Part shown: positions 4,460 to 44,053 of the stretch, piece after piece
How the letters are laid out: each line of letters opens with the position of its first letter
How positions within the stretch are numbered: position 1 is the first letter of the stretch
DNA from: Paragordius varius
Taxonomy: Eukaryota; Animalia; Nematomorpha
Assembly (NCBI GenBank): GCA_964247055.1
Contig: OZ176052.1
Coordinates: 8,432,001-8,496,000 of the forward strand
Length of the DNA: 64,000 nucleotides
Direction of reading: 5' to 3'
The notes under the pieces: model-generated
Database searches by the model: none
What the model was told of the DNA's origin: nothing
The model's input: only the letters and a program-made list of their open reading frames with translations
Translations under genes and position numbers: made by a program

Positions 4460-6408
4460 ATGTTTATTGATTCTCACACATTGTGTGCGAAGAAAAACGA
4501 TTTAATTTCAAATCCCCATAAGGCAAAATACCACTTTACACCTATTCATAATTTCGTAAATGAATTGCAATTGAAGGATCATGCAAATATCTTCGCAAAT
4601 CAAAGAATAAAAGAAGCCAAACTCAGAGCTGATAGTCATTTGCATCCATTGAAGATAAACCCAGTGATTGCTAAAACATTGAGGTTGAGTGATTATACGA
4701 ATATCATTGCCAATCAAATAATAAAAGAGGAATACAAGACTGATTTGCATCCATTGGACATAAACCCAGTAATCGCTAAAACACTAAGGTTGAGGGAATT
4801 GGCAAATCTCATTATAAATCATATTATTAAAGATGTCAACAAAGCTGAAAGTCATTTGCACCCATCAAAGATAAACCTAGTGATTGCTAAAACATTAAGG
4901 CTGAGTGATTATACAAATATCATTACAAATCAAATAATAAAAGAAATATACAAGGCTGATAGCTATTCGCCATCGGAGATAAACCCAGTGATTGCGAAAA
5001 TAATAAGGCTGAGAGATTTTACAAACATCATTGCAAATCAAATAATAAAAGAGGTCAACAAGGCTGATAGTCATTGGCATCTATCGGACATAAACCCAGT
5101 GATCGCTAAAACATTAAGGCTGAGGGATTTTACGAACATCATTGCAGATCAAATAATAAAAGATGTTAAACTCAAAGCTCATAGTCATTTGCATCCGTCG
5201 GGTATAAACCCAGTGATTGCTAAAACATTAAGGCTGAGTGATTTTACAAATATGATTGCAGGTCAAATCATAAAAGTTGTCAATAAGGGTGATGGTAATT
5301 ACCCATCGGATCTAAGCCTAGTGATAGCTCAAACATTAAAACTGAGGGATTTTACAAATAACATTGCAAATGAAATAATAAAAGAGGTCAACAAGGCTGA
5401 TAGTCCTTTACACCCTACGGAGAACCCAGTGATTGTTAAAATATTAAGGCTGAGGGAATTTACAAATATCATTGCAAAACAAATAATAAAAGAGGTCAAC
5501 AAGGCTGATAGCCATTTACATCCGTCGGACATAAACCCAGTGATTGCCAAACCATTAAAATTAAAAGTTTATACAAATACTAAAGCAAATCAAATGTTTA
5601 AAGATTCTATAAATATAGATCATCCGCATAATCAAACACAAAAAAGTTTTGATAAAAGATTGAATATATCTAAACCGGAGAACACTTCCGATTATAGTAG
5701 TAACAAAAGCCTAACTCTCTCCAATACTGCACTAAAATCAAGAAAGAAAGTAAGATGGATAGATGAAATAAAACCAAATGAAAGTGAAATGGTGAACAAT
5801 AACGCTAATCCATCACAACTTTACAATTCTTTCCAAGCGAAAGTTTTTCCGAATTGCGATAGCCAATATAAGAATGTAGAGGGATGTACGTTGAGATATA
5901 AATATGAATTAAAGACAGAACTACGGAGAATACGGACATCTGGTAATATATAATATTTCAATTGTATCATCCTTTAATCAAATTTATCATTAGCATACAT
6001 TTTATTAGTGCTATAGGATGACATTTTTCAGGTTTAATCAATTAATTTTAAATTGGTTAATTATATTTAGGAAAGGAAATGATTCCTCAAACATCAGATA
6101 AAGAATACAGACTGATGAAACAACTTGTCGAAATAGCAGATAATGAATCGGTGCGATCGTTTCATTCCAGACAAACCAACAAGTATATTTTAATTTATTT
6201 TGTGAGAAAATTTTCTATTTACTCAATATAAGTTGTTTTTTTTGTTATTTATTTTGGAAGGCGGCCAGCTCCAAGTATTTCCTCCATTCTTGGCAAGAGT
6301 AATTGTGCAAACAATACAACATCACAGGCACCTCTTAAAAGCATTTTGCGTAACAGTCAAGGCTCGTTAAACAAACGGACTTTTTGGAATAAAAAAATAT
6401 GGATATAA
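4460..6408 (+). CDS. Unknown ~580-aa tandem-repeat protein, copy 1. Exons 4460-5942, 6071-6182, 6261-6408. Putative PKA/PP1 scaffold
   Basis: The 497-aa ORF has a GT donor at 5943 (tct g|gtaata). AG acceptors at 6070 and 6260 and a donor at 6183 keep the frame (1743 nt = 581 codons, TAA 6406-6408). The same splice sites are kept in copy 2. The function is inferred from motifs only. Confidence 0.8.
4570..5610 (+). repeat. Coding tandem repeat: about 10 units of 35-38 aa (about 105-114 bp), consensus ADSHLHPSDINPVIAKTLRLRDFTNIIANQIIKEVNK
   Basis: Directly visible in the translation and in DNA (ataaacccagtgattgctaaaacattaaggctgag recurs). The equivalent array in copy 2 is at about 11165-12195. 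Confidence 0.95.
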
Positions 6409-7319: not shown

Positions 7320-7650
7320 TTCATGTACAAATTTTTTATAGCTGATCTGTCTGAGGATAAATTGATCAGATTGGAGATTAAAAGGTGGGTGTCATCTGTT
7401 AATTGTTTTTCTTTTTCTAGGTCTGCATCGTTTTCGCTTACCCTCTACCAGGCCCAGCATGATTGTTTTCTCCAATTTAAACGTTGCGGACGACGTGGAA
7501 GTAGCCTAATCGCCGTTTAGTTATTATTTAAAGTAATTTAGTCTTAGGGTTATTGTATTGCGGATCCATTCATTAGTGAGTTTGTCCGTTTATTTTTTTC
7601 CAAGTAGCATTCTCCAGCAAGCTTGCTCAAAAGCTTGGAGACGTCAATAT
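7320..7650 (-). mobile_element. Decayed RTE-clade non-LTR retrotransposon 3' fragment
   Basis: The minus strand reads ...TNEWIRN...KRRLGYFHVVR...LEKTIMLGLVEGKRKRCRPRKR, matching the RTE C-terminal LEKTIMLGKVEGKRKRGRP motif. It has frameshifts. Confidence 0.75.
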
Positions 7651-11052: not shown

Positions 11053-12999
11053 ATGTTTATTGATTCTCACACATTGTGTGCGAACAAAAACGATTTAATT
11101 TCAAATCCACATAAGGCAAAATACCACTTTACACCTATTCATAATTTCGTAAAGGAATTGCAGTTGAAGGATCATGCAAATATCTTTTCAAATCAAAGTA
11201 TAAATGCAGCCAAACTCAGAGCTGATATTCAATTGCATCCATTGAAGATAAACCAAGTGATTGCTAAAACATTGAGGCTGAATGATTATACGAATATCAT
11301 TGTAAATCAAATAATAAAAGAGGAATACAAGACTGATTTGCATTCATTGGACATAAACCCAGTAATCGCTAAAACACTAAGGTTAAGGGAATTGGCAAAT
11401 CTCATTATAAATCATATTATTAAAGATATCATTAAAGCTGAAAGTCATTTGCACCCATCAAAGATAAACCTAGTGATTGCTAAAACATTAAGGCTGAGTG
11501 ATTATACAAATATCATTACAAATCAAATAATAAAAGAAATATACAAGGCTGATAGCTATTCGCCATCGGAGATAAACCCAGTGATTGCGAAAATAACAAG
11601 GCTGAGAGATTTTACAAACATCATTGCAAATCAAATAATAAAAGAGGTCAACAAGGCTGATAATCATTGGCATCCATCCATAAACCCAGTGATCGCTAAA
11701 ACATTAAGGCTGAGGGATTTTACGAACATCATTGCAGATCAAATAATAAAAGATGTCAAACTCAAAGCTCATAGTCATTTGCATCCGTCGGATCTAAACC
11801 CAGTGATTGCTAAAACATTAAGGCTGAGTGATTTTACAAATATGATTGCAGGTCAAATCATAAAAGTGGTCAATAAGGGTGATGGTAACCCATCGTATCT
11901 AAGCCTAGTGATAGCTCAAACATTAAAACTGAGGGATTTTACAAATAACATTGCAAATGAAATAATAAAAGAGGTCAACAAGGCTGATAGTCCTTTACAC
12001 CCTACGGAGAACCCAGTGATTGTTAAAATATTAAGGCTGAGGGAATTTACAAATATCATTGCAAAACAAATAATAAAAGAGGTCAACAAGGCTGATAGCC
12101 ATTTGCATCCATCGGACAATATCCCAGTGATTGCCAAACCATTAAAATTAAAAGTTTATACAAATACTAAAGCAAATCAAATGTTTGAAGATTCTATAAA
12201 TATATATCATCCGCATAATCAAGCACAAAAAAGTTTTGATAAAAGATTGAATATATCTAAACCGGAAAATACTTCCGATTATAGTAGTAACAAAAGCCTA
12301 ACTCTCTCCAATACTGCATCTAAATCAAGAAAGAAAGTAAGATGGATAGATGAAATAAAACCAAATGAAAGTGAAATGGTGAACAATAACGCTAATCCAT
12401 CACAACTTTACAATTCTTTCCAAGCGAAAGTTTTTCCGAATGGCGATAGCCAATATAAGAATGTAGAGGGATGTACGTTGAGATATAAATATGAATTAAA
12501 GACAGAACTACGGAGAATACGGACATCTGGTAATATATAATATTTCAATTGTATCATGCTTTAATCAAATTTATCATTAGCATCCATTTTATTAGTGCTA
12601 TACGATGACATTTTTCAGGTTTAATCAATTAATTTTAAATTGGTTAATTATATTTAGGAAAGGAAATGATTCCTCAAACATCAGCTAGAGAATACAGACT
12701 GATGAAACAACTTGTCGTAATAGAAGATTTAGCAAATCAATCGGTGCGATCATTTTATTCTAAAACCAACAAGTATAATCTAATTCATATTGTAAGAAAA
12801 TTCTCTTTTTACAAAAATTTAATTTGTTTTTTTTGTTATTTATTTTAGAAGGCTGCCAGCTCTAAGCATTTTGTCCATTCATGGCAAGGGTAATAGTGCA
12901 CACAATACAACATCACAGGCACCTCTTAAAAGCATTTTGCGTAACAGTCAAGGCTCGTTTAACAAACGCAATTTTTCGAATAAAAAAATATGGATATAA
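11053..12999 (+). CDS. Unknown ~579-aa tandem-repeat protein, copy 2. Exons 11053-12529, 12658-12772, 12852-12999
   Basis: 495-aa ORF plus the same two introns as copy 1 (1740 nt, TAA 12997-12999). All net exon length differences from copy 1 are multiples of 3 (-6, +3, 0). Confidence 0.8.
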
Positions 13000-16608: not shown

Positions 16609-19600
16609 TCAGGGCGAGTATAAATAATTATATTCCGGATCAAATTCACTTATCGTTTGGGGGTAAAATCACTTTTAATTTTAGACATTAATTCCACCAT
16701 TATTAAAGTTGTTTGGATAACACACGCTAGAGTACCAGATCCCTTTGTTAAATATAAAAAACACGATGAAAATATTTGGAGGTCCAAACACGGAACTATT
16801 TCAGAGTTTAAATCCGATCATTATTTGGAATATGTATATCAGGCTTCCCTAGACGATTTGTTTCCAAACACTACTTATTGTATTTTTTATTTTTAATGAA
16901 AATTAGATTATCATTGTGGTAGCCCAAAATTTGGATGGAGTGACGAATCATCATTTACAACTTTACCTCAGCCATATAAAAATGAAGAAAATTGGTCAGT
17001 AAATCTTATAATTTTTGGCGATTTGGGGGTTGGTAACGCTCAATCGCTAACTGATATTCAAGAAGAAATTTTTCAAGCTAATCCCTTATCTTTTCCAAAA
17101 CGACATAAAACTCTGAGTAATTTAATTGCTTATCACATAGCAATTTGAGCCATTATTTACTTTAAAGAAATGAGTTTTTTAATAAACGTGACCTAATTTA
17201 AACAAATTTTACCCCTTTTTTCGTTATCTCAAAGCTTTTTCTTTTATGTCTGGATTGAGCTTTTGACCAGTATTTAGTCTTTATGCAGTTATTTACAGTC
17301 ATAAGTTAATAATACCATTAAAATGGTATATTATGATTGTGTGTTAGAGCTTAGTCGCGTAGCGACTCTTAGCCCTCTTAGAAATCAGCTTTTTCCATTC
17401 CAGACGATCTTCAGACTTTCGAGTTATTTGGTAAAGGATTGGTAAATGATTTTATAATATTGAGCTACCGATTTTTGGGGCGGCCTCTTTTGCGAGTACT
17501 ATCGACCAACCTAAGGAGAATGTTTTATCAATTGGATCGTACAATATGGCCAAGATATTTTAATTATAGATTACTATATTGGTTTGATGAAGTTAAGTTA
17601 TGAATTAGAGATGTGGCCTTTCCAGAAGATGCCCAGAGTTTTCCGAAAGCACCACATTTGAAACGAGTTGAAGCGATTTTTGTCGGTGGTATACACATGA
17701 TTCAGAACCGTAAATATTGACGGGGTAAACCATCGCCTTTAGGATGGCGAATTTAATTAAAAAACTAATTTTTAATAATGTCATTAATCTATATATTTAT
17801 AAAAATGGAAAATGCTGGCTTTGTGATCTGGTACAGGAAAACCGGTAGACCCATTACCCAAAAAATATAATCATTAATGAATGCCCCGACAATAGCTTCG
17901 CCCTTTTTTTGAATAAAGCCCCCAGTTCGGGCCTACCGAGTAAAAAACGTTTTTTTTAAAAAAAACAAAAGTCCACAAAAATCGTGTCTTTTACAATTTT
18001 CCGGAAGACGTGTTGGACCATTCGATTTCAAATGTGATTTTTTTAGTTATTTTCGATTGCGCCAAACATAATCGTCTCGCTTTTTAAACTTAGGCCCTCT
18101 TTTTACCCGCTCCCCCCGTAAAATGCCATTTTTTAAAAAAAAACAAAGTCCACAAAAATAATTTTTTGTTTGTATTTATTTGCCCAAGGTATTTCAAATA
18201 ACCACCCCCCCCCCCCCCCCCCCCAGAAGTCCGAAGGACTTCCTCGGGCTGCGTAGCAGCACGAGATTTACGCTAGTATAATAATAATTAACCAACTGAT
18301 AATGTTTAAAATTTCTCAATTTTTAAATTAAATCTTCTATATATTAATTTTATGTGTTTAAGATAATATTTTTTATCCTAACCGTTTTTTCCAATTCCAA
18401 GTCCAATTTTTTACCTCTCGTTCCGGTTTCGTTATTTAGTTTTTCAAGAAAAACGTTTTTGATCAAATAGTGCTAGTAGTGGGTTTCAGTCAAAAGGTTT
18501 TAATTCCGGGTTTTTTTTAATTAGGATAGCACATGTAAAAAAAGTGTCTCAAAAACACATATTATAAACCATAAATTTAAAAATTGAAAAGTATTCAAAT
18601 ATAAGAAAAACAAGTTTTACCTTGTATTAATTATACAAAATAAATGATTAATAAAAGGTTTTTCTAACCGCTGCCAAAAATTGCCGTCTATTAGGCTGTA
18701 AAGTTATGTTAATGGTCCCGTTCCACATAAACAGTTAGAGTTTCGATCCTTGATTTTTTAAGCGGTCAGCAATATAAGAACATTTATAAAACCCGTCCGA
18801 ATTCTAACTCTAATTACCATATTTTTAATGTATTTACTCTATTTTTGTGTTTAGATACGACTAAAGCAAAATCTCCAACCGACGGTGTAATTAACGCTAT
18901 TCTCCATGTCGGAGATTTTGCCTACGATATGCATCAAGATGATGGACTCAGAGGGCGGCTTTTTATGCGACAGATCCAACCAATCGCCTCCCGCGTTCCG
19001 TATATCACGTGCCCTGGAAACCATGAACATCACGGGAATTTTTCTCATTACAAACATAAATTGGGTGCTGGTATGCCTGGAGATCCTGAAGGGGCCAACA
19101 TGTTTTATAGGTTTGAGCAGTTATTTAGTTAGTTAGATACAAGTTTTTGTCGGAAAGTTCAAAAATAGTATATTATAGTACTTTTATTGTTGGCCATTTC
19201 ACATTATTATTTGAGCAATTGGCAATTCTATAGCGTATGGATAAAAAACAACAAATGTTTGAAATCAAACATTTTTCCCCATCTTACAACATTAAATTTT
19301 TAATTATAAACAAAATTTGTTTTATATCATAGGCTATTATATTGCTAATTGGCCAACAATCTGGGTATTTTAATTTTAGATAACTTTATGGTTATATGTT
19401 TTTTATTTATTGTTTTGTAAATTTAACTTTTATATTTTGCATAAAGGTGTGAAAACCCTTCGTAAAAAGTCATTTTTAAATATTATGATTAATATAAGTT
19501 TGTTTTAATCTTGCTAATTGATGTCAATTTAATGATTTGTATATACAATTTGAGATTGGGAATTGCGCCTTTTTTTATTCCTCCTACTCCTCATCTTTAT

Positions 19601-20527
19601 CAATATCGATCATAAAAAAATTAGGAACCCAAATGCCTATAACTAAATGCATTTTATTTTATAAATTTTTTTTTATATTTGAACCGATAAAGCATATACA
19701 TTAAAATGTGTCTATTTTACTTATAGTTTCAATATGGGTCCAGCGCATTTTATTTCTTTTTCTACGGAATATTATTTCTTTTGGGAATATGGGTTTTGGC
19801 AAATAAAGAAGCAATACGAATGGCTTGAAGCCGATTTAAAGGTTATTTCAATATGTAACCCTTAAAACAATTTGTTAGACACGCATTTAATTTGTAAAAA
19901 TATTATATTGTTATTTACTTTAAATAAGAGTGATATTGACATACTAAAATATTCTAATATGCTAAAAATTATAGATTTTATGCGTAGGTATTTATTTAAA
20001 ATTTTTTATCATAATTAACACAATAAGGAAGCAACGAAACCAGAAAATCTAAAATTACGACCATGGATAATAACATTTGGCCACAGACCTATGTATTGTA
20101 GCAATTGGAATACCGATGATTGCACTAAAAATAGTAGCATAGTAATTATATATCAATTTTTAGGTTGATTTCTCATTTAAGTTTGTATTTAACATTTGTG
20201 GTTTTTTAACTGCGTTTACTATATCAGATAGCCTTTTTTATTTTAATATTACCTTTTTTTCTCGTATAATTATATCAATAATTCCGATTCATTTATAAAA
20301 TGATATACATTGATAATTATATTATTTTTTATATGGAATATAAGTAATAACTATTTTTTGAACAAAAACATCATATATCTTTAAAAATTCAATTAGTAAT
20401 TTTTTTTTCAATTTTAAAACAATTAGTCATGCAATTCCTTTTTATTTTATCTAATGTTATTATTTAAAAGCCACTATTTGATTCTAAAATTAAATGCGCT
20501 TAAATTTATGTAATAATTTGTTTAATA

Positions 20528-20575
<48 letters not shown>

Positions 20576-23030
20576 TATTTTAATCTGTTTATAGTAACGA
20601 ATCCAAAATGTCAATAAAATATTATTTCTATATATATGTGTGATATTTTCATTTTAGGTACGAACGGGTATCCCATTTTTAAGATGGTATGGATTGGAAT
20701 CTCTTTTTTACAAGTACGGTGTTGATATTGAATTATGGGCGCATGAACATAATTATGAGAGATCATGGCCTGTTTACAATAAAAAGGTTTTTATTTTAAC
20801 AAAATTTTTAAATAATTTATTCTTTCGTAACCGTATCCTACCTTTTTTAAAAATGTGTATATTGATTTGGGCGATTTCATTACTGTAGTTCTATATAATT
20901 GTTCTTCTCCCTCATAAAAAAGGTGCCTAATTATCGCATGATCATTATCACACTTTCTTTAGATTTATATAAGATCGGGAATTTTATTAAACAACTTTTA
21001 ATAATTGCGTGACATTGCAAACAAAAAAATCTTGTTGAAATGTATTTAGGCAGAATCCTGATTCTCATGGTCCATTAATAGTTTACGGGTTATTTAAGGT
21101 TTTTTTCAACTCTTATAGTGTGTTTCTTATACTAAATACTACACGTGTCAAAATAAAATTACTTTTCGCAAAAAATTTTGCCAATGTTTTGAATAAAAAT
21201 TTATGTTTATTTAATAATCTGGCATATTCTTGCAATGCCGGTTTTAAGCGTTTATTTTAAGGTACCCATTTCATCGGATTGAATTTTAATGCCGTTGTTT
21301 TCCATTTTTAATTTAATCTACATAAAAATAATTTGATTGAAAGCGATCAACTTTTGCTAAAACTTAATTATACCTAATATGCGCTAAATTTTCAGCATTT
21401 CTGATTTAGATATAATAAAAGTTATTCCGTTTTTTAGACGCATAAGCGATTGTTGATACATCTACCAAAATATACCTCTTTTAGGAAATTTTAAAAATTT
21501 GGCGTCTGTGTATTAACTTAAAATATTAATATTTGAACTACTTTTAATATTAATATTTATTAACGTTTATAATCATGTCTCTCCATAATTAAGTTGACTG
21601 AAGCCTCATATTCATTAAATTGAAAAATAATAACTTAACCATAATAAAATTATTTTTTTTCACGATTTAAAAAATATATTGTAATAAACTATTCACAGTC
21701 AAGCAAATATATTTAATATTTGGTTATATTTAATTTTACGCATTACAATTTTAATAGGTAATGAATCATACTGACTTATCTGATCCATATATACAGCCAC
21801 TAGCTCCTATCCATATAATAACTGGAAGCGCAGTAATCATTTTTTAATTAATATCCCGCAATTTGTAGAACATATATACCGAATAAAATAAACAATCTAG
21901 CGCTTCCTTACCTTTTAAATTTATAGCCTATATGGCTTAAATCCGTAAAAAAAATAAAATAAAAAATAATTTTGGTAAAATCATTATATTTAAATATTTT
22001 AAGATAAGAGTTATAAAGTTTTGAAATTTTTAGAGCTTAAAATCAATTAAAAGAAACAGCTAATTTTTCCTAATGTATTGCAATATAATTAATTGCATTT
22101 AAATTAATTTTTACATAATATATTTCGATTTGTAAATTTTTAGCGATTTATTAAACATCCAGAAAAGCATTATCGGTAAAAAGTTTGAGATTAGGATTTT
22201 TTACATATTTTATATTTTTTTGATTAATGCGCCTAGGCCATCATATACTTTTAATAATTGGCCCAATATTAGATTTTTTAGATGAATTTATTTTGGGGGT
22301 AAAAAACCCAAAAGGTGATTGAAGTTTTTGATTATGATAAATATAAAAATAAATTAACCCAAAAATTAATATTTAACATTAGTTTAGCGAGCATGATAAT
22401 TTTGAACAAATGCTTTAACAACTCGTATAATTTTAACTTAAATTATTTATTTCTATTTGTAAAATTTTTAGCAAGTCTTTAAGTATCAATTTTAATTATA
22501 TAATAATATTATGTAGGTTTTACGTAATACAATTTTTATACTTTTATATTTCTATAATAAATGTTTTTATGAAGGATTGAAATTAAGTTTTTTGTACACC
22601 CACATAAATTAATAGGGTTTTTTAATATATAGTGACGTTTTTTAATATTATCTTTAAATATATTTAACGGTATGTTGTGGATTTTTTTATCTTTTATTTA
22701 TTTAAAAAATATAGGGTTGTTCTGAAAAACATGATTCTTTTGAACAAAAACAACCCGAATGGTCAGCATTTCGAAGCCTCGATTATGGTTATACAAAGAT
22801 GAAAATAGTTAACAAAACCCATTTATATTTAGAGCAAATTAGTGTCGATCAAGTAAATATATTAGCCAAAATAGTTTGTTGTAATTTTTTAATTTTGTAA
22901 TAGTTTGATTTAACTATACATTATTCTGAACTATTTATGAAATTTTTATATATTTTTTATAATTTAATAGGGTAAAGTGATCGACAACATTTGGGTCATC
23001 AAAAGAAAAAACCTCATTGGTAATGAATAG
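16609..23030 (+). CDS. ACP7: Purple acid phosphatase (acid phosphatase type 7). Exons 16609-16662, 16685-16879, 16907-17116, 18855-19110, 19727-19841, 20028-20141, 20658-20786, 21758-21832, 22715-22852, 22971-23030. First (signal-peptide) exon not located
   Basis: All five PAP metal-ligand motifs are intact: FGDLG, HVGDFAY, PGNHE, FGHRPMY, WAHEH. N-terminal PDQIHLSFG...VVW...YHCGS...GWS and C-terminal IITGSAGC and GYTKM match ACP7-type enzymes. The exon sum of 1346 nt plus 1 nt from the missing exon gives 449 codons. Confidence 0.93.
17335..17752 (-). mobile_element. Decayed RTE-clade retrotransposon 3' fragment in an ACP7 intron
   Basis: The minus strand reads LKAMVYPVNIYGSES...GRPKNR...EDRLEWKKLI, resembling RTE KAMVFPVVLYGCESW...GRP..RW...DR..W. 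It is frameshifted. Confidence 0.75.
17788..18276 (+). mobile_element. Non-autonomous Helitron (489 bp) in an ACP7 intron
   Basis: A|TCTATATATTTATAAAAATGG...hairpins...CTAG|T, with a 20-nt poly-C run at 18205-18224. Confidence 0.92.
20533..20572. repeat. (TA)n microsatellite in an ACP7 intron
   Basis: Direct. Confidence 0.9.
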
Positions 23031-23071
23031 CCATAGATATATTAGAGACAAATAAATTAATATATTTTTTA

Positions 23072-23429
23072 TTATCCGCGTGGTAAGTTAAGTTTTGCAT
23101 ATGCATTTTGGCGTCTCTTGTGCATTTTACGAATGCGTATCCAGTATTCAGCAGAATCAATTTCTATTTGTTCAAATGGTATTTTTTCTAGTCTTAATTC
23201 CCAAAGCCAGTTGGGATATTCAGAGTCACTTTTTATCGGAATATCTGGCTCGTCTTTGTGGTAGTTAGCACCACAAACAAAGTTACAAAGTTTCTCAGGA
23301 TCTGTTTCAACATCATATAAAACTCTTTTGGGTTTTTTATTTATTGGTGGCAATTTATCTAAATAAAATAATAATTATACTTTGAAGAACATTTGTAGAA
23401 TATTTTTTGACGAAATTAAAAATTCGCAT
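23072..23429 (-). CDS. MRPL54: Mitochondrial ribosomal protein mL54. Exons 23429-23381 and 23358-23072 (about 111 aa)
   Basis: VETDPEKLCNFVCGANYHK...IKSDSEYPNWLWEL...YW matches the mL54 family. The ORF-track start is a TTG. The only nearby ATG exon (MRIFNFVKKYSTNVLQ, presequence-like, with an in-frame stop just upstream) joins in frame through a 22-nt GT-AG intron. Exon 1 is less certain than the gene identity. Confidence 0.85.
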
Positions 23430-23981
23430 GTGCGATTATTTTTTAAAATGATACCACATATGATTTTAAGCTCAATATTGCTAATCTTAATTATCGTTTT
23501 AATCGCGTAAGATTTAATATATAGAATATTAGACCTATATTAAAATATGCATTCTATGATTAGGCTTATTTTACAAAAAATTTAACAATACTTTTAATTT
23601 TTTCTGCCAAAAATTTAGTGTGGATTACACTGAATCGCTAAAAAACTAGTACAAAACCATTTTGGAAACTATAAAGCAAAGCAGTTAATTTCAAACCGAT
23701 TTATTGATGTATCAAATTAAATTATCGGTATTAATAGAGTGTTTGGAATAAAAGCCTGAAACATCCAATAGACTGTTAAACTTGTAAGGTTTTTTTGTTA
23801 AATAAACACTGCGTCCTATCGTAGGGTTAAAAAATTTTCCTGATGGAATATATATGTTCTAATAGATAATCAGGATTCTCTTGGCACTTATGAATGATAA
23901 CAAAATAATTTGTACCTGTGTGGTAAAAGCTCGATAATATATTGCAAAATTAGCGCACATTACAGGTAAGCAAAAATATCA

Positions 23982-24976
23982 TCTATATATTTATAAAAAT
24001 GGAAAATGCTGGCTTTGTGATCTGGTACAGGAAAACCGGTAGACCCAATCAAATCCAAATATCGAAAAAATATAATCATTAATAAATGTCCCGACAATAG
24101 CTTCGCCCTTTTTTTGAAATAGGCCCCCAGTTCGGGCCCACCCCCTATGAAAAACGGGTTTTTTTTTGAAAACAGAAGTCCACAAAATCGTGTTTTTGAG
24201 AAAATTTTCCGGAGAACGTGTTGGACCATTCAATTTCAAATACGATTTTTGTTTACTTATTTTCGATTGCGCCGAACATGGTCGAGTCACTTTTTTGATT
24301 TAGGCCCTCTTTTTACCCGCTCCCCCCGTAAAATGCCATTTTTTTCAAAAAACAAAGTCCACAAAAATAATTTTCTAAATCAATTTTTCGCCCTAGGTAT
24401 GAGACCGTAAAAATTCAATAAAGATTCCACGTATTCCCTGTTAAAAGGCAAAAATTTTAGTCCACCGTTTATTTGATGATAGCTGCTGGGTAAGGAGCTA
24501 CCCGCTAAAAACTGATTTTTCATATAACTTTGTGATCTCTTTCCGGAAAACCGGTGAACCCATTCAAATCCAAACATCGAAAAAATTTTATCATTAATGA
24601 ATGCCCCGACAATAGCTTCGCCCTTTTTTGGAATTAGGTCCCCAGTTTGGGCCCACCCCGTGTGAAAAATGGGTTAAGTCAATTTTTTGGAGAACGTGTT
24701 TGACCATTCAATTTCAAATACGATTTTTGTTTACTTATTTTCGATTGCGCCGAACATGGTCGAGTCACTTTTTTGATTTAGGCCCTCTTTTTACCCGCTC
24801 CCCCCGTAAAATGCCATTTTTTTCAAAAAACAAAGTCCATAAAAATAATTTTCTAAATCGATTTTTCGCCCTAGGTATGAGACCGTAAAAATTCAATAAA
24901 GATTCCACGTATTCCCTGTTAAAAGGCAAAAATTTTAGTCAAGCGTTTCTTTGATGATAGCTGCTGAGTAAGGAGT
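23982..24976 (+). mobile_element. Helitron copy with 5' TC end and two internal tandem units, lacking its own 3' end
   Basis: Same 5' end and internal sequence as the other copies. It stops at ...gagtaaggagt, with no hairpin or CTAG until the mini-copy 60 bp downstream. Confidence 0.85.
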
Positions 24977-25036
24977 ATCTATTATATGTATCGCATGTTA
25001 AAAGATATATGGATATTAAAACATTAATTATGGTAA

Positions 25037-25177
25037 TCTATATATTTATAAAAATGGAAAATGCTGGCTTTGTGATCTACAGGAAAAACGGTAAACCCAT
25101 TCAAATCCAAACTTAGAACCCCCCCAGAAGTCCGAAGGACTTCCTCGGGCTGCGTAGCAGCACGAGATTCACGCTAG
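25037..25177 (+). mobile_element. Minimal 141-bp Helitron
   Basis: A|TCTATATATTTATAAAAATGG...gaagtccgaaggacttcctcgggctgcgtagcagcacgagattcacgCTAG|T. Confidence 0.92.
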
Positions 25178-25279
25178 TTATGAAATAAATATATTCCAAT
25201 AAAAAAATGTATCATGAATCTCATAGTGCTTTTGGAGGGCCTACAAGGGTAAGAAAGTTTTATATATGTTTGTGTGCGC

Positions 25280-26230: not shown

Positions 26231-26739
26231 TTACAACAAAATATAATCTTTCTTAACTCACTCATAATAGTCAAATCCGAAAGATTATGATGATCCTGAT
26301 ATACATTCCATTGGATTGTGCATATTTCGGATTTATTTATTACGGCCAACATCTATAAAATAGAAGCCAAATCTAATTGAAAATTAGCATTAGATAAAAA
26401 GATTGCCCACTAATTTTTAAATAAAATCAAAAGACTAGAAGAAATAAATTTCCCTTTTTTACCATAACATACTTTTATTTGTCATCTTTTAGCGTTAAAT
26501 ATCTTAGAAAATATATTAGATTATGGTTGTGGTGTCAGGTTAAAACCATTTAAAATTTTTTTAAAAAAATTTTAAATTTCCCAGAAAGTCATAAAACACA
26601 TATATTGTTTAATATTTTAGATACCTATCACATAATTTATCCAGTCGCTCTGCAAAAAATGACCCCACAAGTTATCAAATTTTTTTATGATGATAACTCA
26701 TTCATACATTTAACCATAAAATTTAAATTCAAATTTTAT

Positions 26740-26898
26740 ATGAAAAGCATTGTATGGAATTATTTTAAAGTGAGTACGAACGATGAGACAAAAGCTATTT
26801 GTAATTTATGTAATGCCTTGATTTCACGTGGTTCAAAATTTTCAACATCATCCCTACTTAATCATATACGTACCAAACATTATTTCCCCAAGAAACAG
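26740..26898 (+). pseudogene. Isolated BED zinc-finger exon, hAT transposase N-terminus type; no catalytic domain found
   Basis: MKSIVWNYFKV...KAICNLCNALISRGSKFSTSSLLNHIRTKH has the W-x2-F, CxxC, H-x4-H pattern. It ends at cag|gtatca. A hAT-end-like accggttatacaag follows at about 27087. Confidence 0.7.
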
Positions 26899-27139
26899 GT
26901 ATCATTATAATTAAATTTCTTAACTGTTTAAATCATGTATATTTCCTCTTATTTTTGATTTAACTAGAAATCCAACATAATTATGTTACCGATTATGACC
27001 CTATATATTTTACAGATGAAAGTTAAAAACACCATATTAATTACCAAAAAATATTTTACTTCAAATTCCATAGTTCAGGTTATATTACCGGTTATACAAG
27101 ACATTAGTATAAATTATATGTCCAAAAATTATGAGACAT

Positions 27140-36500: not shown

Positions 36501-37109
36501 GCGAAATGCAACTAAGTAAAAATCGTAGGAGGGGGAGGGAGGAGGAGTCATTATTAGATATAGAAAGCAACGCATAAGGGGGAAAGATTGGATATATAGG
36601 GAGCAAGTAAGCAAGCTAGCAAGCAAACAAGTAGTTGTTGCACATCATTATCGTATATAAATACGTTTATTTTAGTGTGTTGTTTACGATAATAAAAAAT
36701 ATTCAATAAAAATCTATATTAAATAACCATTTTTTGGTGTTATGCTTGAATATACGACTTTTATTGATAAAAATTGATACTTCATATAACCTTTGACTTC
36801 TGCTCTTCTGTGTTCCGCACACCCCCTTTGTCTCCTCGTCTAAGTGTTTATATATAACTAAATAATAAACTTTGATTCTGCCATTTTGGTTAACAGATTG
36901 ATTATTAAATTTATTGCATACCTGTTCTATACCAATAATCATAACAATATCTTTTCATCACTTTTTCGATTTTAAAATTTTTGAGCGATGGATATGATAA
37001 ATAAAAGTTTAGCATTTTAATTATATTTAATGTACCGCATATCATAATATATATCTTTTTTACAACATTATTGTATGGTTTATAGTTGAATTCAAGCTAC
37101 CTGAAAGCT

Positions 37110-40100
37110 ATGGAAGATGGTAAAGTTGATATCACAAATTCGGCATCGTCGCAAAATCTCACAAACTCCAAGGAGGATGAAAATAAAAATGTAACTAAAC
37201 AGAATCCACAAAAATCCCTTACGAATAATCACAACAATAAAAACAACAATCTATTTAGCAGTCTTCTTGTGATGAATGGATGCAATAATAGTAGTGGTAT
37301 AATTGGCGATGATAAATTAAGCATAAATGCAATAAAAACTGATGTTGAAAACATACAACCACCACCACCTGCTCTTGTTGAATATAATAATAATAATGTT
37401 GATATCAACAAAAATGAGGTCGATATAAATGACACTGTTAATAATATAAATGCTATTGCTAGCACAAATGTAAGTAATGGCACATATGAACTACGAGACC
37501 AGCAACAGAAAATAAATATTTCGAATATGCTTGAATCAAACATGGATATCACATCCATTCTCAATGAAATTAATGCCGCAGGCCAACCAACATCATCGCA
37601 AAAGTCAACGACACAAACTGGGTCCTCAGTCTCTTTCTCTCCCTCTAAAAAATCTTCAGATAACGTTGGTACTAATCAAGACATCAATATTGAAGAGTTT
37701 ATCGCTAAACTTACCAATAGTTTTGGTAATAAAGCGGAAGATGGCTCAAACTCTCACAATGATTCATTAGTTGTGGATGAAAATATATTCGCCAATTCAA
37801 TTACAACAACAGATGGGAACAATGTTAATCATTCTTCCGATGCTTTTATCCCCTCATCATCATCAAATTATTCCACAAATGCGACACCCGGAAGTTCTTC
37901 TGGTGTTTCCAAATACCCAGTTTTAGCGGTGGATGATGAAAGTGTTTCAGCTCCAAGTACAAGGGCTAAACTTACGCCCACCGTTTTTAGTGATAAAATT
38001 TGTTTGGCCCGCGCTCTGCAAGCCGGAGACCCGCGGTTAAAGCTGGTACAAAGAGGGGGCAACGTTAAAAGTCCTGTTTGGAAGATATTTCGTGTCATAA
38101 CGTTCGAGGGGAGAAAGACGAACCATATAGCATGTTATAGATGCCTTCAGGTATGTTATAGCAATCTAAAAATAAATGTAATTTTATTGTTTTGTTTAAT
38201 GTCACATATTTTCTGTTTAATTTTTAGTAAGTACATTATAAAGAATGTGCCACACTTAAGTATTTTACTGTGTTCGCCGAATATATTTAACCAAAAATTT
38301 TTGAAAATTTTATAACTATATTAGAGCAATTTACATTGATCCTTCATATATCAAATTTTCATTATTTATTAATAAATTGTCCTTAAAATTTTGTCAAAGG
38401 ATAAAATTTAAATTTTTTTTATTGAACATGTTTGGCGAAAACCATTGACACAACAATCTACAATAAAATAATGTTTATTTATTAAAAAATTGACCATGTT
38501 AGAGTAAAATAACTCAGGTGTCCTTTGATTATTTATAAAAATGAAAGTTTAACAGTTCATGCCGTACGTAGTTTACCGTTTTTAATGCAAAATGTTCCTT
38601 ATAAAAATGTAACTATTGGCCTAATTAATTTCATTCTAATGAAATTATTACGATACTCATATAGGTTTATAGGTATGATTCACATCACATGGGCACCTCT
38701 AACCTCTATCGCCATAAATGTGTTAACAATACAAATAATGAAAAAGCTGTTAACAGTGTTGATAATTTAACCCAATCTCCACTATCCATGAGTCCGGAAA
38801 AGACTGTCACTAAAAATGTGGATACATCTGAGCCCCAAAGCAATGATGATACAATAGGTAAATAAATTTATGCTATTATTTATCCTAAAGTTTTAAAGCG
38901 TAAAATTTTTGTGAGGAACAGTATTTGACAAGGTTATTATGGAAATGACTTCCCTTTAACCCAAAATTTATTTGAACTGCAAATAATAAATAATTATTTT
39001 GTGTTGATTTAAACCCATATAAAAGGATAAAATTTAAACATACGGGCTTGGATTTATTAGAACGATAACAAATACCTATAACATCGGTTTTAACACTATC
39101 AAACATAAATTATTTCTAATAGTACTGCATTTTTGCCCTTAAATTAATTTCTTCAAGCCTAAATTACTTTTTACCCAAATTAAATTCACCTTTGGATCGT
39201 GATAATATTTTATAAAACTAAGCCAATGCCCTTTAATTAATATTAGTCATTTCGATTTAGTATTGATTAATTAATATTGTTTGTTTTTATCTTTTTTTAT
39301 AATAATTTAGGTTTTTGTAAGCATTAAATACATTAACCTTTTTTCTTAACTTCCCGGTTCATTGTTTTTGTTAGCCGATAAATAAACACGCATTTAAAAT
39401 TATTTCAAACAGGTAAATTTAACAATGGATTTTTTATGGTTTCTGTATTTTGTAAAAAATTACACCAGGTGTGTAAAAATATAAATAATGGTATAAATAT
39501 ACCGATTCTCAAAATATTTTTTAAAAAATATTTTTTATTAACAGGAGAAGAAAAAATATATGTAGATGATTCCAAAAATTCCGAGAATCTTACCATTAAA
39601 GAAGAACAATCCGAAAATGACAGTGATGATTATAAACCATATGTTACAAGCAAATGTAACTATAAATAATTTCATTAAACTTATTTATTTCAATAAGTAA
39701 AATTTTAACCTAAGTTAGCTAAGAAAGTTAAATATATTAAAATCTAAGTTTAAGTGAAAAATCTTGAAAGGCACAATTATACTTATGAATGCAAGTTCTC
39801 AGAATAAACAAATAAGCGCAGATATTGTGTAATTTTAGATAAAATAAAATAACTCAATTCAGTAAAAAAACACTATTTATTACCTTTGCGCACGTTTATC
39901 AATTTTTGCCATAAAATTGTTATAAAATGTTTTCCTAAGTATTATATTATTCAATTTTTTAAAATGATATACCTATACAATTTGCTTCACTATATATATA
40001 GCACAACATGAAAAACAACAGGCTTCCCAAGTCAGTACTACACCTGTCCAATCAACTAATCGAAGAAAGAGGAGTATAATTTCATCTCTTGCGCAAAGAA

Positions 40101-43100
40101 AACGTTTGAAATTACCTAAATTACAATCTAGTTTACAAAGTATGTTTTTTATGCCCTAAAATTATTGAACGTTTGGAAATACGACCTAAAAATTATATAA
40201 ATATCTATATCAATCGGTTATTTAACCATTTTGCATTGTTTCGATGCATTAGTTTTTATAAGAAAATACAATTATATAAAATTTACTTTCTTAACTAATA
40301 TTGGATGAAAGCATTCAGCGGTTGGATTTTAAGCCGATTAAACGTCTTTTTGTCTATTTATGAACATTTATATATCATTTTTATAATTTGTCAATTAATT
40401 ACAGAACACGTCCCAAACCCATATCCCACAAACTTGGTCAATAATAGTTCAGAAACCGCTACAGATGAAATGGATGAGGCTATTATAGAAAACAATTTAA
40501 ACACCTCTGATTCTAATAGTAAAAACTTATTTTAAATCTATAATAGTAATATTACACTTAAATACAACTATATATTTACCATTTTTGAATATTTTTTTAT
40601 TGTTTTTTGAAAAAAATTGGTTAGCATAAATGATGAAAGAATATAACTAAATAAATTTTTCTTATAAACCAAACTTTTATTTAACTCCTTAAAAATGCTT
40701 TGATTTAACTAAAAACAATTTATTAGATTCCTACAAATTTTGGCAGAAAATCACTTGTTTGGGTTTGATGAAAGATTTTATGGATGAAATTAAATCGAAT
40801 CTCGACACCTGCGAGCAAACTATTGCCGCTTCAATCAAACATACAAACATCGAAAATAACAGCATTGATGATAATACCGTTTCATGTAAGTTATAGTTTA
40901 CACTAATTTTTTAGTTTTGGTATTATTAATAAATACTAAAATATATTTTAATTTATTATAGGTTGTAGGAAATTGAATGTAATTGTTAACGCTTTGGGAC
41001 TTAATCAAAGTTTAAAATTGTTATTCAAAAAATACCGGCGTTCCGTCCTCTTGGAACAAGAGAAAAATCGGAAAGAATTATTGGGTAACTTAATTTTTTA
41101 TTTAATCAGTTTTATACAGGTACATAGAGCTTATAATGAACCATATTGTGTTTTCTAGATTTACGACAAAAATTATTGTTAAAACAACACAAAAGTGAAA
41201 ATTTAAAGATTAGGGATGCATTTTTCAAAGAACTCATGGTTGAACATGACCAGATTTTGGCCCCAAACTCTGTAAACGTATCCAATAGCCTAACGAATAA
41301 TTGTGCATTATCACCTGATTTATTGTCACTTCAAGCTTTGATTGGAGATACGAATATGAACGCACAATCGAATTCTTTAGTATACAATGCTAATAATAAT
41401 GTTAATTTTGCGTTAAATACAACCATAAATAATAATGGTAATAGTCTTTTGACTGATAAAAATCTCAATATGCTGTACAACAGTTATTACAAAACATCTA
41501 TGTATTCACAGGCCAATACGGGTTCGACATCATCGTTTATGTCCACCAAAACGTTAAATGTAAGTATAAATTAAATAATCATAATCATATATGCAGGAAA
41601 CATCTAAATATATTGCCCTAATTTAATGTATTATATCTATATAAATTAGTTATAGTCATAAGTCTTTACCGGTTTTTTGGTAAAAAATACTTAATTTGGA
41701 ATTTGTTTTTTGATATCTGCATATTTCGCCCCTCTCTCTGTTAATATTTGATATGCCAGATGTTTGACTTTTGCCAAAAACTATTCGTCAAGGCATTTTA
41801 CAGTTAATTGTAAAAGTGCTGCTCAACGAGAGTGTTTTCCAGCCACGTAAAGGTAAGGTATGATGCTGCCAGATCAGGAGAATACAGCGAACGCGGAAGA
41901 ATTTTCAAAGTATCTTTCACTGTTTTGCTATGTGAGACGGAGCATCGTCATGTAGCAAGATCATTTTGCTTTGTCTTTTGGCGCATTCCGGTTGTTTTTC
42001 AATTAATACATGGTTATTTTAGTCATTTAATAGCGATAATGTTGTGTATGAACAATTTTATGGAATTTTATGATTTTATAAACAATGCCGCTTTGACACA
42101 TAGTATGTTTGTTGAAAAGATTTGGCCTGTGGATGATGGCTTCACAAGGTAACAGCCACGATTACTGTTTTCTCATAAGTCACAATTCGGTGTAAAAATG
42201 TTTTTTTCGCGATGTTGAGGCATTTCACAAGTCTCTGCGATTTTCGATTTGACGTTCATGCAAATTGTGTGGACCGATTTTATTGGTCCCTCGCATTGCT
42301 CGTAGACAATCTATTGATTATTTTTTGTGATATATGCGATTCTGCCATATAACGGTGAGTTTCAGTTGGGTCATCATCCAATAATCTTGCACTTGATCGT
42401 TTTTGCAGTGTGCGTTCTTCCAACACACTCTTTCACATTAAATGTGTCAATCGATTGAGCATGATCACCATATGTTTCAGCTAGCAAAAACTAACTTTCA
42501 ACATTTCTTCTGATGATGCCTATGTTTTTTCTGGTTCAACATTTTTCAAGATTCCTGAATGATTGAAGCAAGACTCTAGTTTTTGGTGAACTCAATTATT
42601 TATTTGTTTTATGTGAAGCATGTAGCAAATTAATCGTCTGCGTAGTTTTTTTAATGTCTTCTCTTAAAACTGCAATAAGTTAGGTATACACCTGGATAAA
42701 TATAATATATTATGTAAGTCCCACTTCAGTTTATAATGATTTTTTACTGATAATTATATTTGTTACGTACTCTAGGATATCTTAAAGAGTTTTGATCGCA
42801 CTAATCCAAGAAAAAGCCAAACCTCTAACTTGGATTCCATGATTCTTGCCAAACAACTCAATAATTGGAACGATGTTAGCGGTTCCAAAAATAAATTTGA
42901 AAACTTGAAGATTTTTAACTCTTCGCTCACAAATAAAGAACAGTCCCAGGACAAAAATAAAATTGTTAGTAATAATTTTTTGAACGAAGATTTATTGGAT
43001 ATATCTCGTGCCTTTTTCCCAGACGCATCATTGTTTTCTTCTGCCAACAACAAAAAACAAGCACAACAAAACCAAAACACACTTACGAATGAAAGTTTTA

Positions 43101-44053
43101 CTGCCCAACCTACTCTAACTGTTGCATCAAACACTTCTGAAATACTCAATGCACTGATCGGCGGTGCAAATTATGCCAATTTGAATCTCAATCTCAAAAA
43201 TAATATTGATTCTAATAGGAACAATATGTTGACTCAACAAAGCGTTGGAAATAATCGAAATTCGACTACAAATATTTATGACACACTGAAATCGTTAAAT
43301 TTACCCAACAACAACATCAACAACGGTAATAATAATATAATTAAATCGACATCGTATTATGATACCCTTTTAAATTCAACCGCTCTTACTCTCTTGAGTC
43401 AGTTTAATTTAAGCAATACTAATAGCAATGCGGGTTCAACGCTAAAATCATATATATCTTTTGGTGGCACATCAGCAAATGATAAATCAAATTATTCAAA
43501 CTACACTCAGACAAATACAAATGTCGCAAATATAATGGCAAAACCAAATAATTTGTTACCTTCCCTCCAAAATACAAATTTAACTACCAAAGATTCCCTT
43601 CTAGAAAATTTGTTAAATAACACAAATATTAATCAAGCAATGCTACCAAATAATCTCAATAATCATGTTAATACTCTAAATAACTCTAACAATATGAATC
43701 TCACTACTAATGGAACAATCAATGAAAACGAAAAAATCAATCACCTTAACGCAAATTGTGAACAGAATTCCAAGGATTTTGCCAGTAATTATACCACGCC
43801 AACTAAGATTGATCCCACCACACTAACCCTTAATACTGTAAATGGTGTGTCAAATGGTTCGTCCTCGCCCTTAGATTCAAATGTTAATGACAAAAATCTA
43901 ATACTTCTTAAAAGCCTGCGGAATATATTATCACCAAAAACTTCAGCACCTTCAAGTATCATCACCCAATATATTAACACCTCTGCAAATGAATCAATCG
44001 AAACTACCGGGAAAGCAACTACAAATAATGATACAGCATCGATTTCTCTTTAA
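37110..44053 (+). CDS. BED-zinc-finger protein (~1185 aa, Asn/Ser-rich), probable transcription/chromatin factor. Exons 37110-38150, 38665-38857, 39545-39655, 40002-40139, 40405-40518, 40727-40885, 40962-41084, 41159-41559, 42776-44053
   Basis: Spliced BED finger KSPVWKIF...IACYRCLQ|VYRYDSHHMGTSNLYRHKC. All nine exons are GT-AG and phase-compatible (3558 nt = 1186 codons). Basic NLS-like RRKR and RKRLK are present. The 5' end may extend through the acceptor at 37085. Confidence 0.8.
41644..42696 (-). pseudogene. Second mariner relic, antisense in the last intron of the BED gene
   Basis: The minus strand gives MILLHDDAPSHIA and LYSPDLAAS. TIR remnants are gtcataagtctttaccgg (41655) and the reverse complement ccaggtgtatacc at 42683-42695. 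Confidence 0.85.

What the first reader, a model, noticed from the sequence alone, without database searches (positions are those of the whole stretch)
23359..23380. 22-nt intron needed to give MRPL54 a start codon
Seen: on the minus strand, gtataattattattttatttag separates an ATG exon (MRIFNFVKKYSTNVLQ) from the mL54 body and joins them exactly in frame. Read-through has stops in both relevant frames, and the body has no ATG before the conserved core. The length is identical (22 nt) to the first ACP7 micro-intron, and all three micro-introns start GTA and end TTAG. Inference: a housekeeping gene that depends on a micro-intron argues for a real splicing capability rather than local decay.
Basis: partly seen in the sequence, partly recalled or inferred. 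Interest (0 to 1): 0.72.

Follow-up and report, generated by a model that had tools for sequence, protein, structure and literature searches.

The report
22-base intron in mitoribosomal gene
A small housekeeping gene for a mitochondrial ribosome protein (mL54) can be read only if a 22-base stretch is cut out as an intron; it lies where other animals have a normal-sized intron, so it is probably a real, extremely shrunken intron, but no RNA could be examined.

Summary
On the minus strand, an ATG exon (23429-23381) and the mL54 body (23358-23075) are separated by 22 nt, gtataattattattttatttag (23380-23359). Removing it joins the two exactly in frame. Read-through hits stops, and the body has no ATG before its conserved core.

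New evidence:
- **Conserved position.** Six of seven other animal mL54 genes mapped here have a phase-1 first intron of 65-2627 nt at the same place. It lies 15-26 residues before the invariant TDP; here it is phase 1 and 17 residues before TDP.
- **Acceptor.** The acceptor at 23359 is the only AG that keeps the conserved basic residue at -5 before VETDP.
- **Chance rate.** A chance GTA...AG solution of 18-30 nt with an ATG exon occurs at 2-3% of mock acceptors in this window.
- **Exon-1 peptide.** It is basic, has no acidic residues and is strongly amphipathic (top 2% of matched decoys).
- **Local precedent.** ACP7, in the same window, has two homology-backed micro-introns of 22 and 27 nt.

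The rivals are a distant 5' exon and a 1-nt homopolymer assembly error; both are unlikely. This scan has already noted the same micro-intron class on other DNA of this genome, which is probably a horsehair worm. Published animal introns under 30 nt are limited to myxobolids and Dicyema.

The parts
23436..23459 (-). Short upstream ORF (ATG 23459, 7 codons, TAA 23438-23436) in the same frame as the main ATG. Its stop closes the frame 6 nt before the start codon, so exon 1 cannot be extended upstream.
   Evidence: Sequence read. There is no AG between this stop and the ATG, so no upstream exon can be spliced into this frame.
23381..23429 (-). Exon 1 coding part: ATG, 16 codons (MRIFNFVKKYSTNVLQ) and the first base of a split Asn codon. 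Proposed short mitochondrial targeting N-terminus.
   Evidence: Net charge +3, no Asp/Glu, maximum helical moment 0.634; jointly in the top 2% of composition-matched decoy peptides. FVKK resembles the conserved [YF]AKK block that precedes the intron in other mL54 proteins. The statistical support for that resemblance is weak.
23359..23380 (-). 22-nt GT-AG micro-intron, phase 1, gtataattattattttatttag. It is 91% A+T with no C. Candidate branch A is at -6 or -11 from the 3' end.
   Evidence: Position and phase match the first intron of mL54 genes in six other animals.
23075..23358 (-). Exon 2: last two bases of the split codon plus 94 codons, covering the basic linker (KLPPINKKPKRV) and the conserved mL54 core.
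   Evidence: Pfam PF08561 E 7.8e-9. Human, mouse-like and pig mL54 chains match at E 1e-14 to 7e-11, residues 15-88 aligned to 60-134. 79 animal homologues found.
23068..23074 (-). Stop codon TAA (23074-23072) overlapped by an AATAAA hexamer (23073-23068), a possible polyadenylation signal.
   Evidence: Sequence. The signal's function is inferred only, and the hexamer is weak evidence in DNA this AT-rich.
16663..16684 (+). Comparator: first ACP7 micro-intron, 22 nt, phase 1, gtaaaatcacttttaattttag.
   Evidence: Exon 2 matches Pfam PF16656 profile positions 12-74 with its residues 3-64. This leaves just enough room for the PDQIHLSFG at the end of exon 1.
16880..16906 (+). Comparator: second ACP7 micro-intron, 27 nt, phase 1, gtattttttatttttaatgaaaattag, with in-frame TAA and TGA.
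   Evidence: Removal restores the TTYYYHCGS motif region that follows profile position 74. Because its length is a multiple of three and it holds stops, no indel error can explain it.

Best explanation
The 22 nt at 23359-23380 (minus strand) are a genuine spliceosomal GT-AG intron, the extremely shrunken descendant of the ancestral phase-1 first intron of animal mL54 (MRPL54) genes. Transcription starts a little upstream of 23429. Exon 1 supplies the start codon and a 16-residue basic, amphipathic N-terminus. The spliceosome pairs the minimal donor A|GTATAA with the acceptor TTTTATTTAG|AT, probably using the A six (or eleven) bases before the 3' end as branch point. The junction makes an Asn codon and yields a 111-residue precursor of mitoribosomal protein mL54. 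Shown here: the sequence, the frame logic, the protein identity, the conserved intron position and phase, the chance rates, and the local precedent in ACP7. Inferred: actual excision in RNA, the branch point, the transcription start, and mitochondrial import through this short N-terminus.
For: 1. Need. The body has no in-frame ATG before the core, and both read-through frames stop.
2. Acceptor. 23360-23359 is the only AG between the in-frame stop and the basic residue five places before VETDP. That column is Lys in 37 of 41 homologues and Arg here. The same-donor alternatives of 58 and 79 nt are in frame but delete that residue or the invariant VETD.
3. Conserved intron. Exact spliced mapping of annotated mL54 genes gives a phase-1 first intron in Lineus (395 nt), Bacillus rossius (1809), Ramazzottius (233), Mytilus (1802), Chamberlinius (65) and Ridgeia (2627). 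These lie 15-26 residues before TDP; here the intron is phase 1 and 17 residues before TDP. An unannotated annelid-like contig has a classic acceptor in the same phase.
4. Donor. With the acceptor fixed, the 22-nt solution is the nearest of 75 formal ATG..GT candidates in 6 kb. The next is 529 nt away, and many of the next ones, those from about 23.96 to 25.2 kb, lie in dispersed repeats. A 40-kb scan found no ATG-started candidate outside a dispersed-repeat copy with a [YF][AV]K[K]-like tail.
5. Chance. A GTA-type micro-solution exists at 2-3% of mock acceptors. The exon-1 peptide's charge and amphipathicity are in the top 2% of matched decoys.
6. Local precedent. ACP7 has two homology-backed micro-introns with the same ends, one of the same length.
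Against: The donor is weak by ordinary standards (AAA|GTATAA). The predicted N-terminus is short: 34 residues before TDP, against about 55-65 in full-length homologues. Profile tests of exon-1 homology were not significant: HMM rank in the top 10-25% of decoys, and pairwise tests at p 0.03-0.13. No close relative's gene could be found to test conservation.
Confidence: 0.82

Rival explanations
1. The acceptor at 23359 is real, but it is joined to a more distant 5' exon through a normal-sized or large intron. The nearby ATG exon and GTA donor are then a coincidence.
For: 75 formal phase-1 ATG..GT candidates exist within 6 kb upstream. Full-length homologues have longer N-termini, about 55-65 residues before TDP. 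ACP7 in the same window also has a 1.77-kb intron.
Against: There is no candidate between 22 and 529 nt, and many of the next ones lie inside dispersed repeats. Apart from one inside a dispersed-repeat copy (24141), none within 40 kb combines an ATG with a [YF][AV]K[K]-like tail. The coincidence needed is about 2-3% for the GTA micro-solution times about 2% for the presequence-like peptide.
Confidence: 0.08
2. There is no intron. The assembly has one T too many in the T-run of this segment, or the ribosome shifts +1 there. The gene would then be a continuous ORF with seven extra residues (…VLQ-SIIIIYL-DKLPP…).
For: Removing one T from the T4 run gives an open frame from the same ATG. T-runs are typical sites of long-read assembly error (general knowledge). 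The segment is 3n+1 nt long.
Against: This requires both loss of the ancestral phase-1 intron at exactly this site and an error within a 22-nt stretch that happens to start GTA and end TAG in phase. The 27-nt ACP7 micro-intron, with two in-frame stops, cannot be an indel artefact, so micro-introns are real here.
Confidence: 0.04
3. Exon 1 is spurious. Either translation starts at a non-AUG codon in the body (for example TTG at 23353 or ATA), or the gene has lost its 5' end and is decaying.
For: The body alone carries a basic N-terminal stretch (KLPPINKKPKRV). Earlier notes of this scan report several mitochondrial proteins of this genome without obvious presequences (not tested here).
Against: Non-AUG starts are rare in animals (general knowledge). 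The body is intact over its whole length, 51-60% identical to many animal mL54 proteins and free of stops. A fitting ATG exon sits 22 nt away.
Confidence: 0.03

Closest known systems
Ultra-short (<30 bp) spliceosomal introns of myxobolid myxozoans and Dicyema japonicum (Hadjez et al., Mol Biol Evol 2026, PMC13644364)
   Same: [quoted passage not shown] The median of 22 bp in Thelohanellus and Myxobolus equals the length found here.
   Different: In those lineages the short introns are described through genome-wide medians of 22-27 bp. Here they sit beside kilobase, repeat-filled introns in the same gene (ACP7: 22, 27 and about 1770 nt). The paper names only those two lineages, and neither 'Nematomorpha' nor 'hairworm' occurs in its main text. 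This genome's identity as a horsehair worm comes from earlier notes and composition only.
The orthologous first intron of mL54/MRPL54 in other animals
   Same: Same phase (1) and same place, between the targeting N-terminus with its [YF]AKK block and the basic linker before VETDP.
   Different: It is 65-2627 nt long in the six species mapped, with ordinary GTAAGT/GTGAGT-like donors and pyrimidine-rich acceptors. Here it is 22 nt with GTATAA...TTTAG. Capitella has lost it.
Micro-introns of ciliates (Paramecium about 20-30 nt, Stentor 15-16 nt) and the chlorarachniophyte nucleomorph (18-21 nt); from general knowledge, not tested here
   Same: Length class, GTA...TAG ends, very high A+T, and a branch point that must lie only a few bases from the 3' end.
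   Different: Those are unicellular eukaryotes, or a reduced endosymbiont nucleus, whose introns are nearly all tiny. The gene here uses the standard code (it ends at TAA TAA) and is most like protostome animal mL54.

Membership tests
U2-type spliceosomal GT-AG intron | GT at the 5' end and AG at the 3' end | tested here: met
   gtataattattattttatttag at 23380-23359 on the minus strand.
U2-type spliceosomal GT-AG intron | Removal restores a continuous, homology-supported reading frame that read-through does not give | tested here: met
   The join is open and the read-through has stops. The downstream part is mL54.
U2-type spliceosomal GT-AG intron | Branch-point adenosine in a YTRAY-like context upstream of the acceptor | tested here: inconclusive
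   The A's at -6 and -11 lie in TTTAT/ATTAT contexts, which fit YTNAY but not YTRAY. The T-R-A-Y at -9..-6 seen in the first ACP7 intron is absent.
U2-type spliceosomal GT-AG intron | Excision seen in RNA | not testable with these tools
Orthologue of the ancestral mL54 intron 1 | Same phase and homologous position as in other animals | tested here: met
   Phase 1 in 6 of 7 mapped genes, 15-26 residues before TDP; here phase 1 and 17 residues.
Animal ultra-short intron class (<30 bp; PMC13644364) | Length under 30 bp with reduced splice-site motifs | tested here: met
   22 nt. Beyond GTA and TAG there is no match to GTRAGT.
Animal ultra-short intron class (<30 bp; PMC13644364) | Belongs to a lineage in which short introns are the genome-wide norm (median 22-27 bp) | tested here: not met
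   ACP7 in the same window has an intron of about 1.77 kb next to its 22- and 27-nt introns. Only this window was examined.
mL54 / MRPL54 (Pfam PF08561 Ribosomal_L37) | Score above the Pfam gathering cut-off, and alignment to mL54 chains of solved mitoribosomes | tested here: met
   36 bits against a cut-off of 21. 3j9m_l matches at E 1e-14 over residues 15-88.
mL54 / MRPL54 (Pfam PF08561 Ribosomal_L37) | N-terminal mitochondrial targeting sequence | tested here: inconclusive
   Exon 1 has charge +3, no acidic residue and a helical moment in the top 3.9% of decoys. It is much shorter than in homologues, and no dedicated predictor was available.

The most novel reading that the evidence does not exclude
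This bulky, repeat-rich bilaterian genome, probably a horsehair worm, would be a third and independent animal lineage that routinely splices 20-30-nt introns. Unlike myxozoans and dicyemids, it does so only near gene starts, beside kilobase introns. Ancestral introns such as mL54 intron 1 would have shrunk to a near-minimal size, which would call for altered 5' splice-site and branch-point recognition. Gene predictors that refuse such introns could then account for part of the reported low gene completeness of hairworm genomes.
Probability: 0.6. Interest if true: 0.75.

Novelty: new member of a known kind. Interest (0 to 1): 0.55.

Why it matters
Introns under 30 nt have been published for only two animal lineages (PMC13644364). 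This example is unusually clean because the host gene is a single-copy, essential mitoribosomal gene, the intron separates the start-codon exon from the rest, and its position and phase match an intron of 65-2627 nt in six other animals. It therefore documents shrinkage of an old intron rather than a new insertion.

In practice, aligners and gene finders with minimum intron sizes of about 20-40 nt would miss exon 1 and drop the gene. That could inflate apparent gene loss. The Gordionus genome paper reports 71.6% BUSCO completeness and never discusses introns; the link between the two is my inference.

A 22-nt intron also limits where a branch point can lie, so these introns are good substrates for studying the minimal geometry of the spliceosome.

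Tried and rejected
- **Close relatives.** The word search with the body alone gave one hit. With a two-sequence profile it gave 79 animal mL54 proteins, none above 60% identity and none from a horsehair worm. The best-identity hit (P0008) comes from marine metagenomes. The conservation test on a sister species could therefore not be made. The big HMMER search was not used: the protein was not left open, and a closer relative would already have shared words. The third word search was also left unused.
- **Exon-1 homology.** Profile HMMs of homologue N-termini did not rank the exon-1 peptide significantly (top 10-25% of 1594 decoys). Pairwise local alignments gave p 0.03-0.13. The [FY][AV]KK motif is rare in decoys (0.25%), but I chose it after seeing the data.
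- **Other donors.** The GTs inside exon 1 (53- and 32-nt introns) are out of phase, as read.
- **Other acceptors.** With the same donor, the 56- and 87-nt options are out of frame; the 58- and 79-nt options delete conserved residues.
- **Spliced-leader start.** An SL ending in AUG would be out of frame with a phase-1 acceptor (by reasoning).
- **Synteny.** PEX11 sits beside mL54 in an annelid-like contig and a millipede but is not in this window.
- **RNA genes.** Rfam and tRNA scans of the window found nothing.
- **Joined model.** No search was made with the joined (spliced) protein. The exons were searched apart, by reference, and the joined frame was only checked in a local script.

Full report
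**Observation.** On the minus strand an ATG at 23429 opens 16 codons (MRIFNFVKKYSTNVLQ) plus one base. Then comes gtataattattattttatttag (23380-23359, 22 nt), then 'at aaa ttg cca...', open to TAA at 23074-23072.
- The exon-1 frame, read through, stops at 23357-23355 (24-aa ORF).
- The body frame has a TAA at intron positions 4-6.
- The body's only in-frame ATG is near residue 78.
- An in-frame TAA (23438-23436) lies two codons before the ATG, and no AG lies between them. The exon therefore cannot be extended or fed from upstream in this frame.
- Removing the 22 nt gives an open, phase-1 join.

**What the gene is.** The 94-residue body scores 36 bits on Pfam PF08561 (cut-off 21). It aligns over residues 15-88 to residues 60-134 of human mL54 from solved mitoribosomes at E 1e-14. 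A profile word search found 79 animal mL54 proteins, mostly protostome, at 40-60% identity. The gene is intact. Its stop codon is overlapped by an AATAAA.

**The acceptor.** Between the in-frame stop inside the 22 nt and the conserved core, the only AG is 23360-23359. The segment just downstream (KLPPINKKPKRV) carries the basic residue five places before VETDP; that column is Lys in 37 of 41 homologues and Arg here. So this segment is coding. With the same donor, acceptors giving 58- and 79-nt introns are in frame but delete that column or the invariant VETD. The 56- and 87-nt options are out of frame.

**Conserved intron position.** I mapped seven annotated mL54 genes onto their loci by exact spliced matching. 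Six have a phase-1 first intron between the targeting N-terminus and the core:

| Species | Intron length (nt) | Residues before TDP |
|---|---|---|
| Lineus | 395 | 16 |
| Ramazzottius | 233 | 15 |
| Mytilus | 1802 | 15 |
| Bacillus rossius | 1809 | 26 |
| Chamberlinius | 65 | 24 |
| Ridgeia | 2627 | 22 |
| This window | 22 | 17 |

Capitella is intronless. An unannotated annelid-like contig (L001) shows a textbook acceptor in the same phase. The window's intron is also phase 1. It is best read as the ancestral mL54 intron 1, shrunk by one to two orders of magnitude.

**The donor.** The conserved position supports the acceptor; it does not by itself choose the donor.
- With the acceptor fixed, 75 formal ATG..GT phase-1 exons exist within 6 kb, so ORF logic alone does not decide.
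- The 22-nt solution is the nearest. The next is 529 nt away, and many of the next ones, from about 23.96 to 25.2 kb, lie in a dispersed repeat that also fills the large ACP7 intron.
- Taking every AG of the window as a mock acceptor, an in-phase 18-30-nt GT..AG with an ATG exon turns up at 12%. The rate is 6-8% with 10-16 codons or more, and 2-3% with GTA.
- The exon-1 peptide has net charge +3, no acidic residue and a maximal helical moment of 0.634. Jointly this is the top 2% of composition-matched decoys, as expected of a targeting helix.
- Its FVKK resembles the [YF]AKK block, the most conserved N-terminal block of mL54, which lies 3-9 residues before the intron in the other species. One example is RIF--NFVKK against RIFCANYAKK of Littorina.
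- That resemblance is only a lead. Profile HMM ranks were top 10-25% and pairwise tests gave p 0.03-0.13.
- A 40-kb scan found no better-fitting upstream exon.

**Local precedent.** ACP7 on the plus strand needs a 22-nt and a 27-nt intron, both phase 1.
- Its exon 2 matches Pfam PF16656 profile positions 12-74 with residues 3-64. This leaves just the room taken by PDQIHLSFG before it and YHCGS after it.
- The 27-nt intron is a multiple of three and holds TAA and TGA, so no indel error can explain it.
- The next ACP7 intron is about 1.77 kb. Tiny and large introns therefore coexist in one gene.

**Weak points.**
- The donor (AAA|GTATAA) is minimal.
The first ACP7 intron has that motif (TAAT); here the candidate branch A's are at -6 and -11 in T-rich contexts.
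- The predicted N-terminus (34 residues before TDP) is about half the usual length.
- Deleting one T of the T4 run would also give a continuous ORF, so a homopolymer error or a +1 shift is a formal rival. It would need loss of the ancestral intron exactly where a GTA...TAG segment of 3n+1 nt now lies.

**Context and novelty.**
- Earlier notes of this scan report the same class of 20-30-nt, start-proximal introns on many other pieces of this genome. They take the genome for a horsehair worm, and one note claims RNA support. I did not test those claims. The window's roughly 22-35% G+C and repeat load agree with the Gordionus montsenyensis genome paper (26.93% G+C, 63.8% repeats), which never mentions introns.
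- The current literature names only myxobolid myxozoans and Dicyema as animals with introns under 30 bp (PMC13644364).
- This finding is therefore one more well-supported member of a class that is known in kind but, as far as the searchable literature shows, unpublished for this lineage.
- Its particular value is the strict dependence of an essential gene's start codon on the intron, together with the demonstrable homology to a normal-sized intron elsewhere.

**Verdict.** A real 22-nt spliceosomal intron, confidence 0.82. The rivals are a distant 5' exon (0.08), an indel error or frameshift (0.04), and a spurious exon with a non-AUG start or decay (0.03).

Noticed in passing
window 23068-23074 (-): An AATAAA hexamer overlaps the mL54 stop codon (TAA followed by TAA), suggesting a very short 3' UTR.
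   Followed up: no
window 23436-23459 (-): A seven-codon upstream ORF, in frame with the main ATG, ends 6 nt before it. If the transcript starts further upstream, this would be a uORF.
   Followed up: no
window 4460-5953 (+) and 11053-12540 (+): Two paralogous single-exon ORFs (497 and 495 aa). Neither has a Pfam match.
   Followed up: partly
window 17700-18300 and 23960-25200: The same dispersed repeat fills the 1.77-kb ACP7 intron and, as two tandem copies of about 480 bp, the region upstream of mL54. Shared ORF fragments such as MENAGFVIWYRKTGRP appear in both.
   Followed up: no
L001:5001-9997 and L009:1001-2479: mL54 and PEX11 lie tail-to-tail in both an annelid-like ENA contig and the millipede Chamberlinius, possibly an old gene pair. 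No PEX11 was found in this window by tblastn.
   Followed up: partly
L008:1001-1429: The Capitella teleta mL54 gene is a single exon. It has lost the phase-1 intron present in the six other animals mapped.
   Followed up: yes
L007:3001-3480: The gene call for P0020 (an mL54-like protein with an Asn/Thr-rich N-terminus) does not translate to its recorded protein. No exact GT-AG spliced solution was found. Unexplained.
   Followed up: partly
window 7520-7541 (+), 19855-19878 (+), 20638-20657 (+), 58104-58126 (+): An ORF-continuity scan lists further AT-rich GT..AG segments of 20-24 nt flanked by long open stretches. Two lie in the later part of ACP7; if real, micro-introns would not be limited to gene starts.
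   Followed up: no
window 26605-26910 (+): An ORF with a BED zinc finger (E 3e-12), possibly transposon-derived, lies upstream of mL54. Several long Asn-rich low-complexity ORFs (37086-38315, 42830-44053, 60707-62842) have no family match.
   Followed up: no
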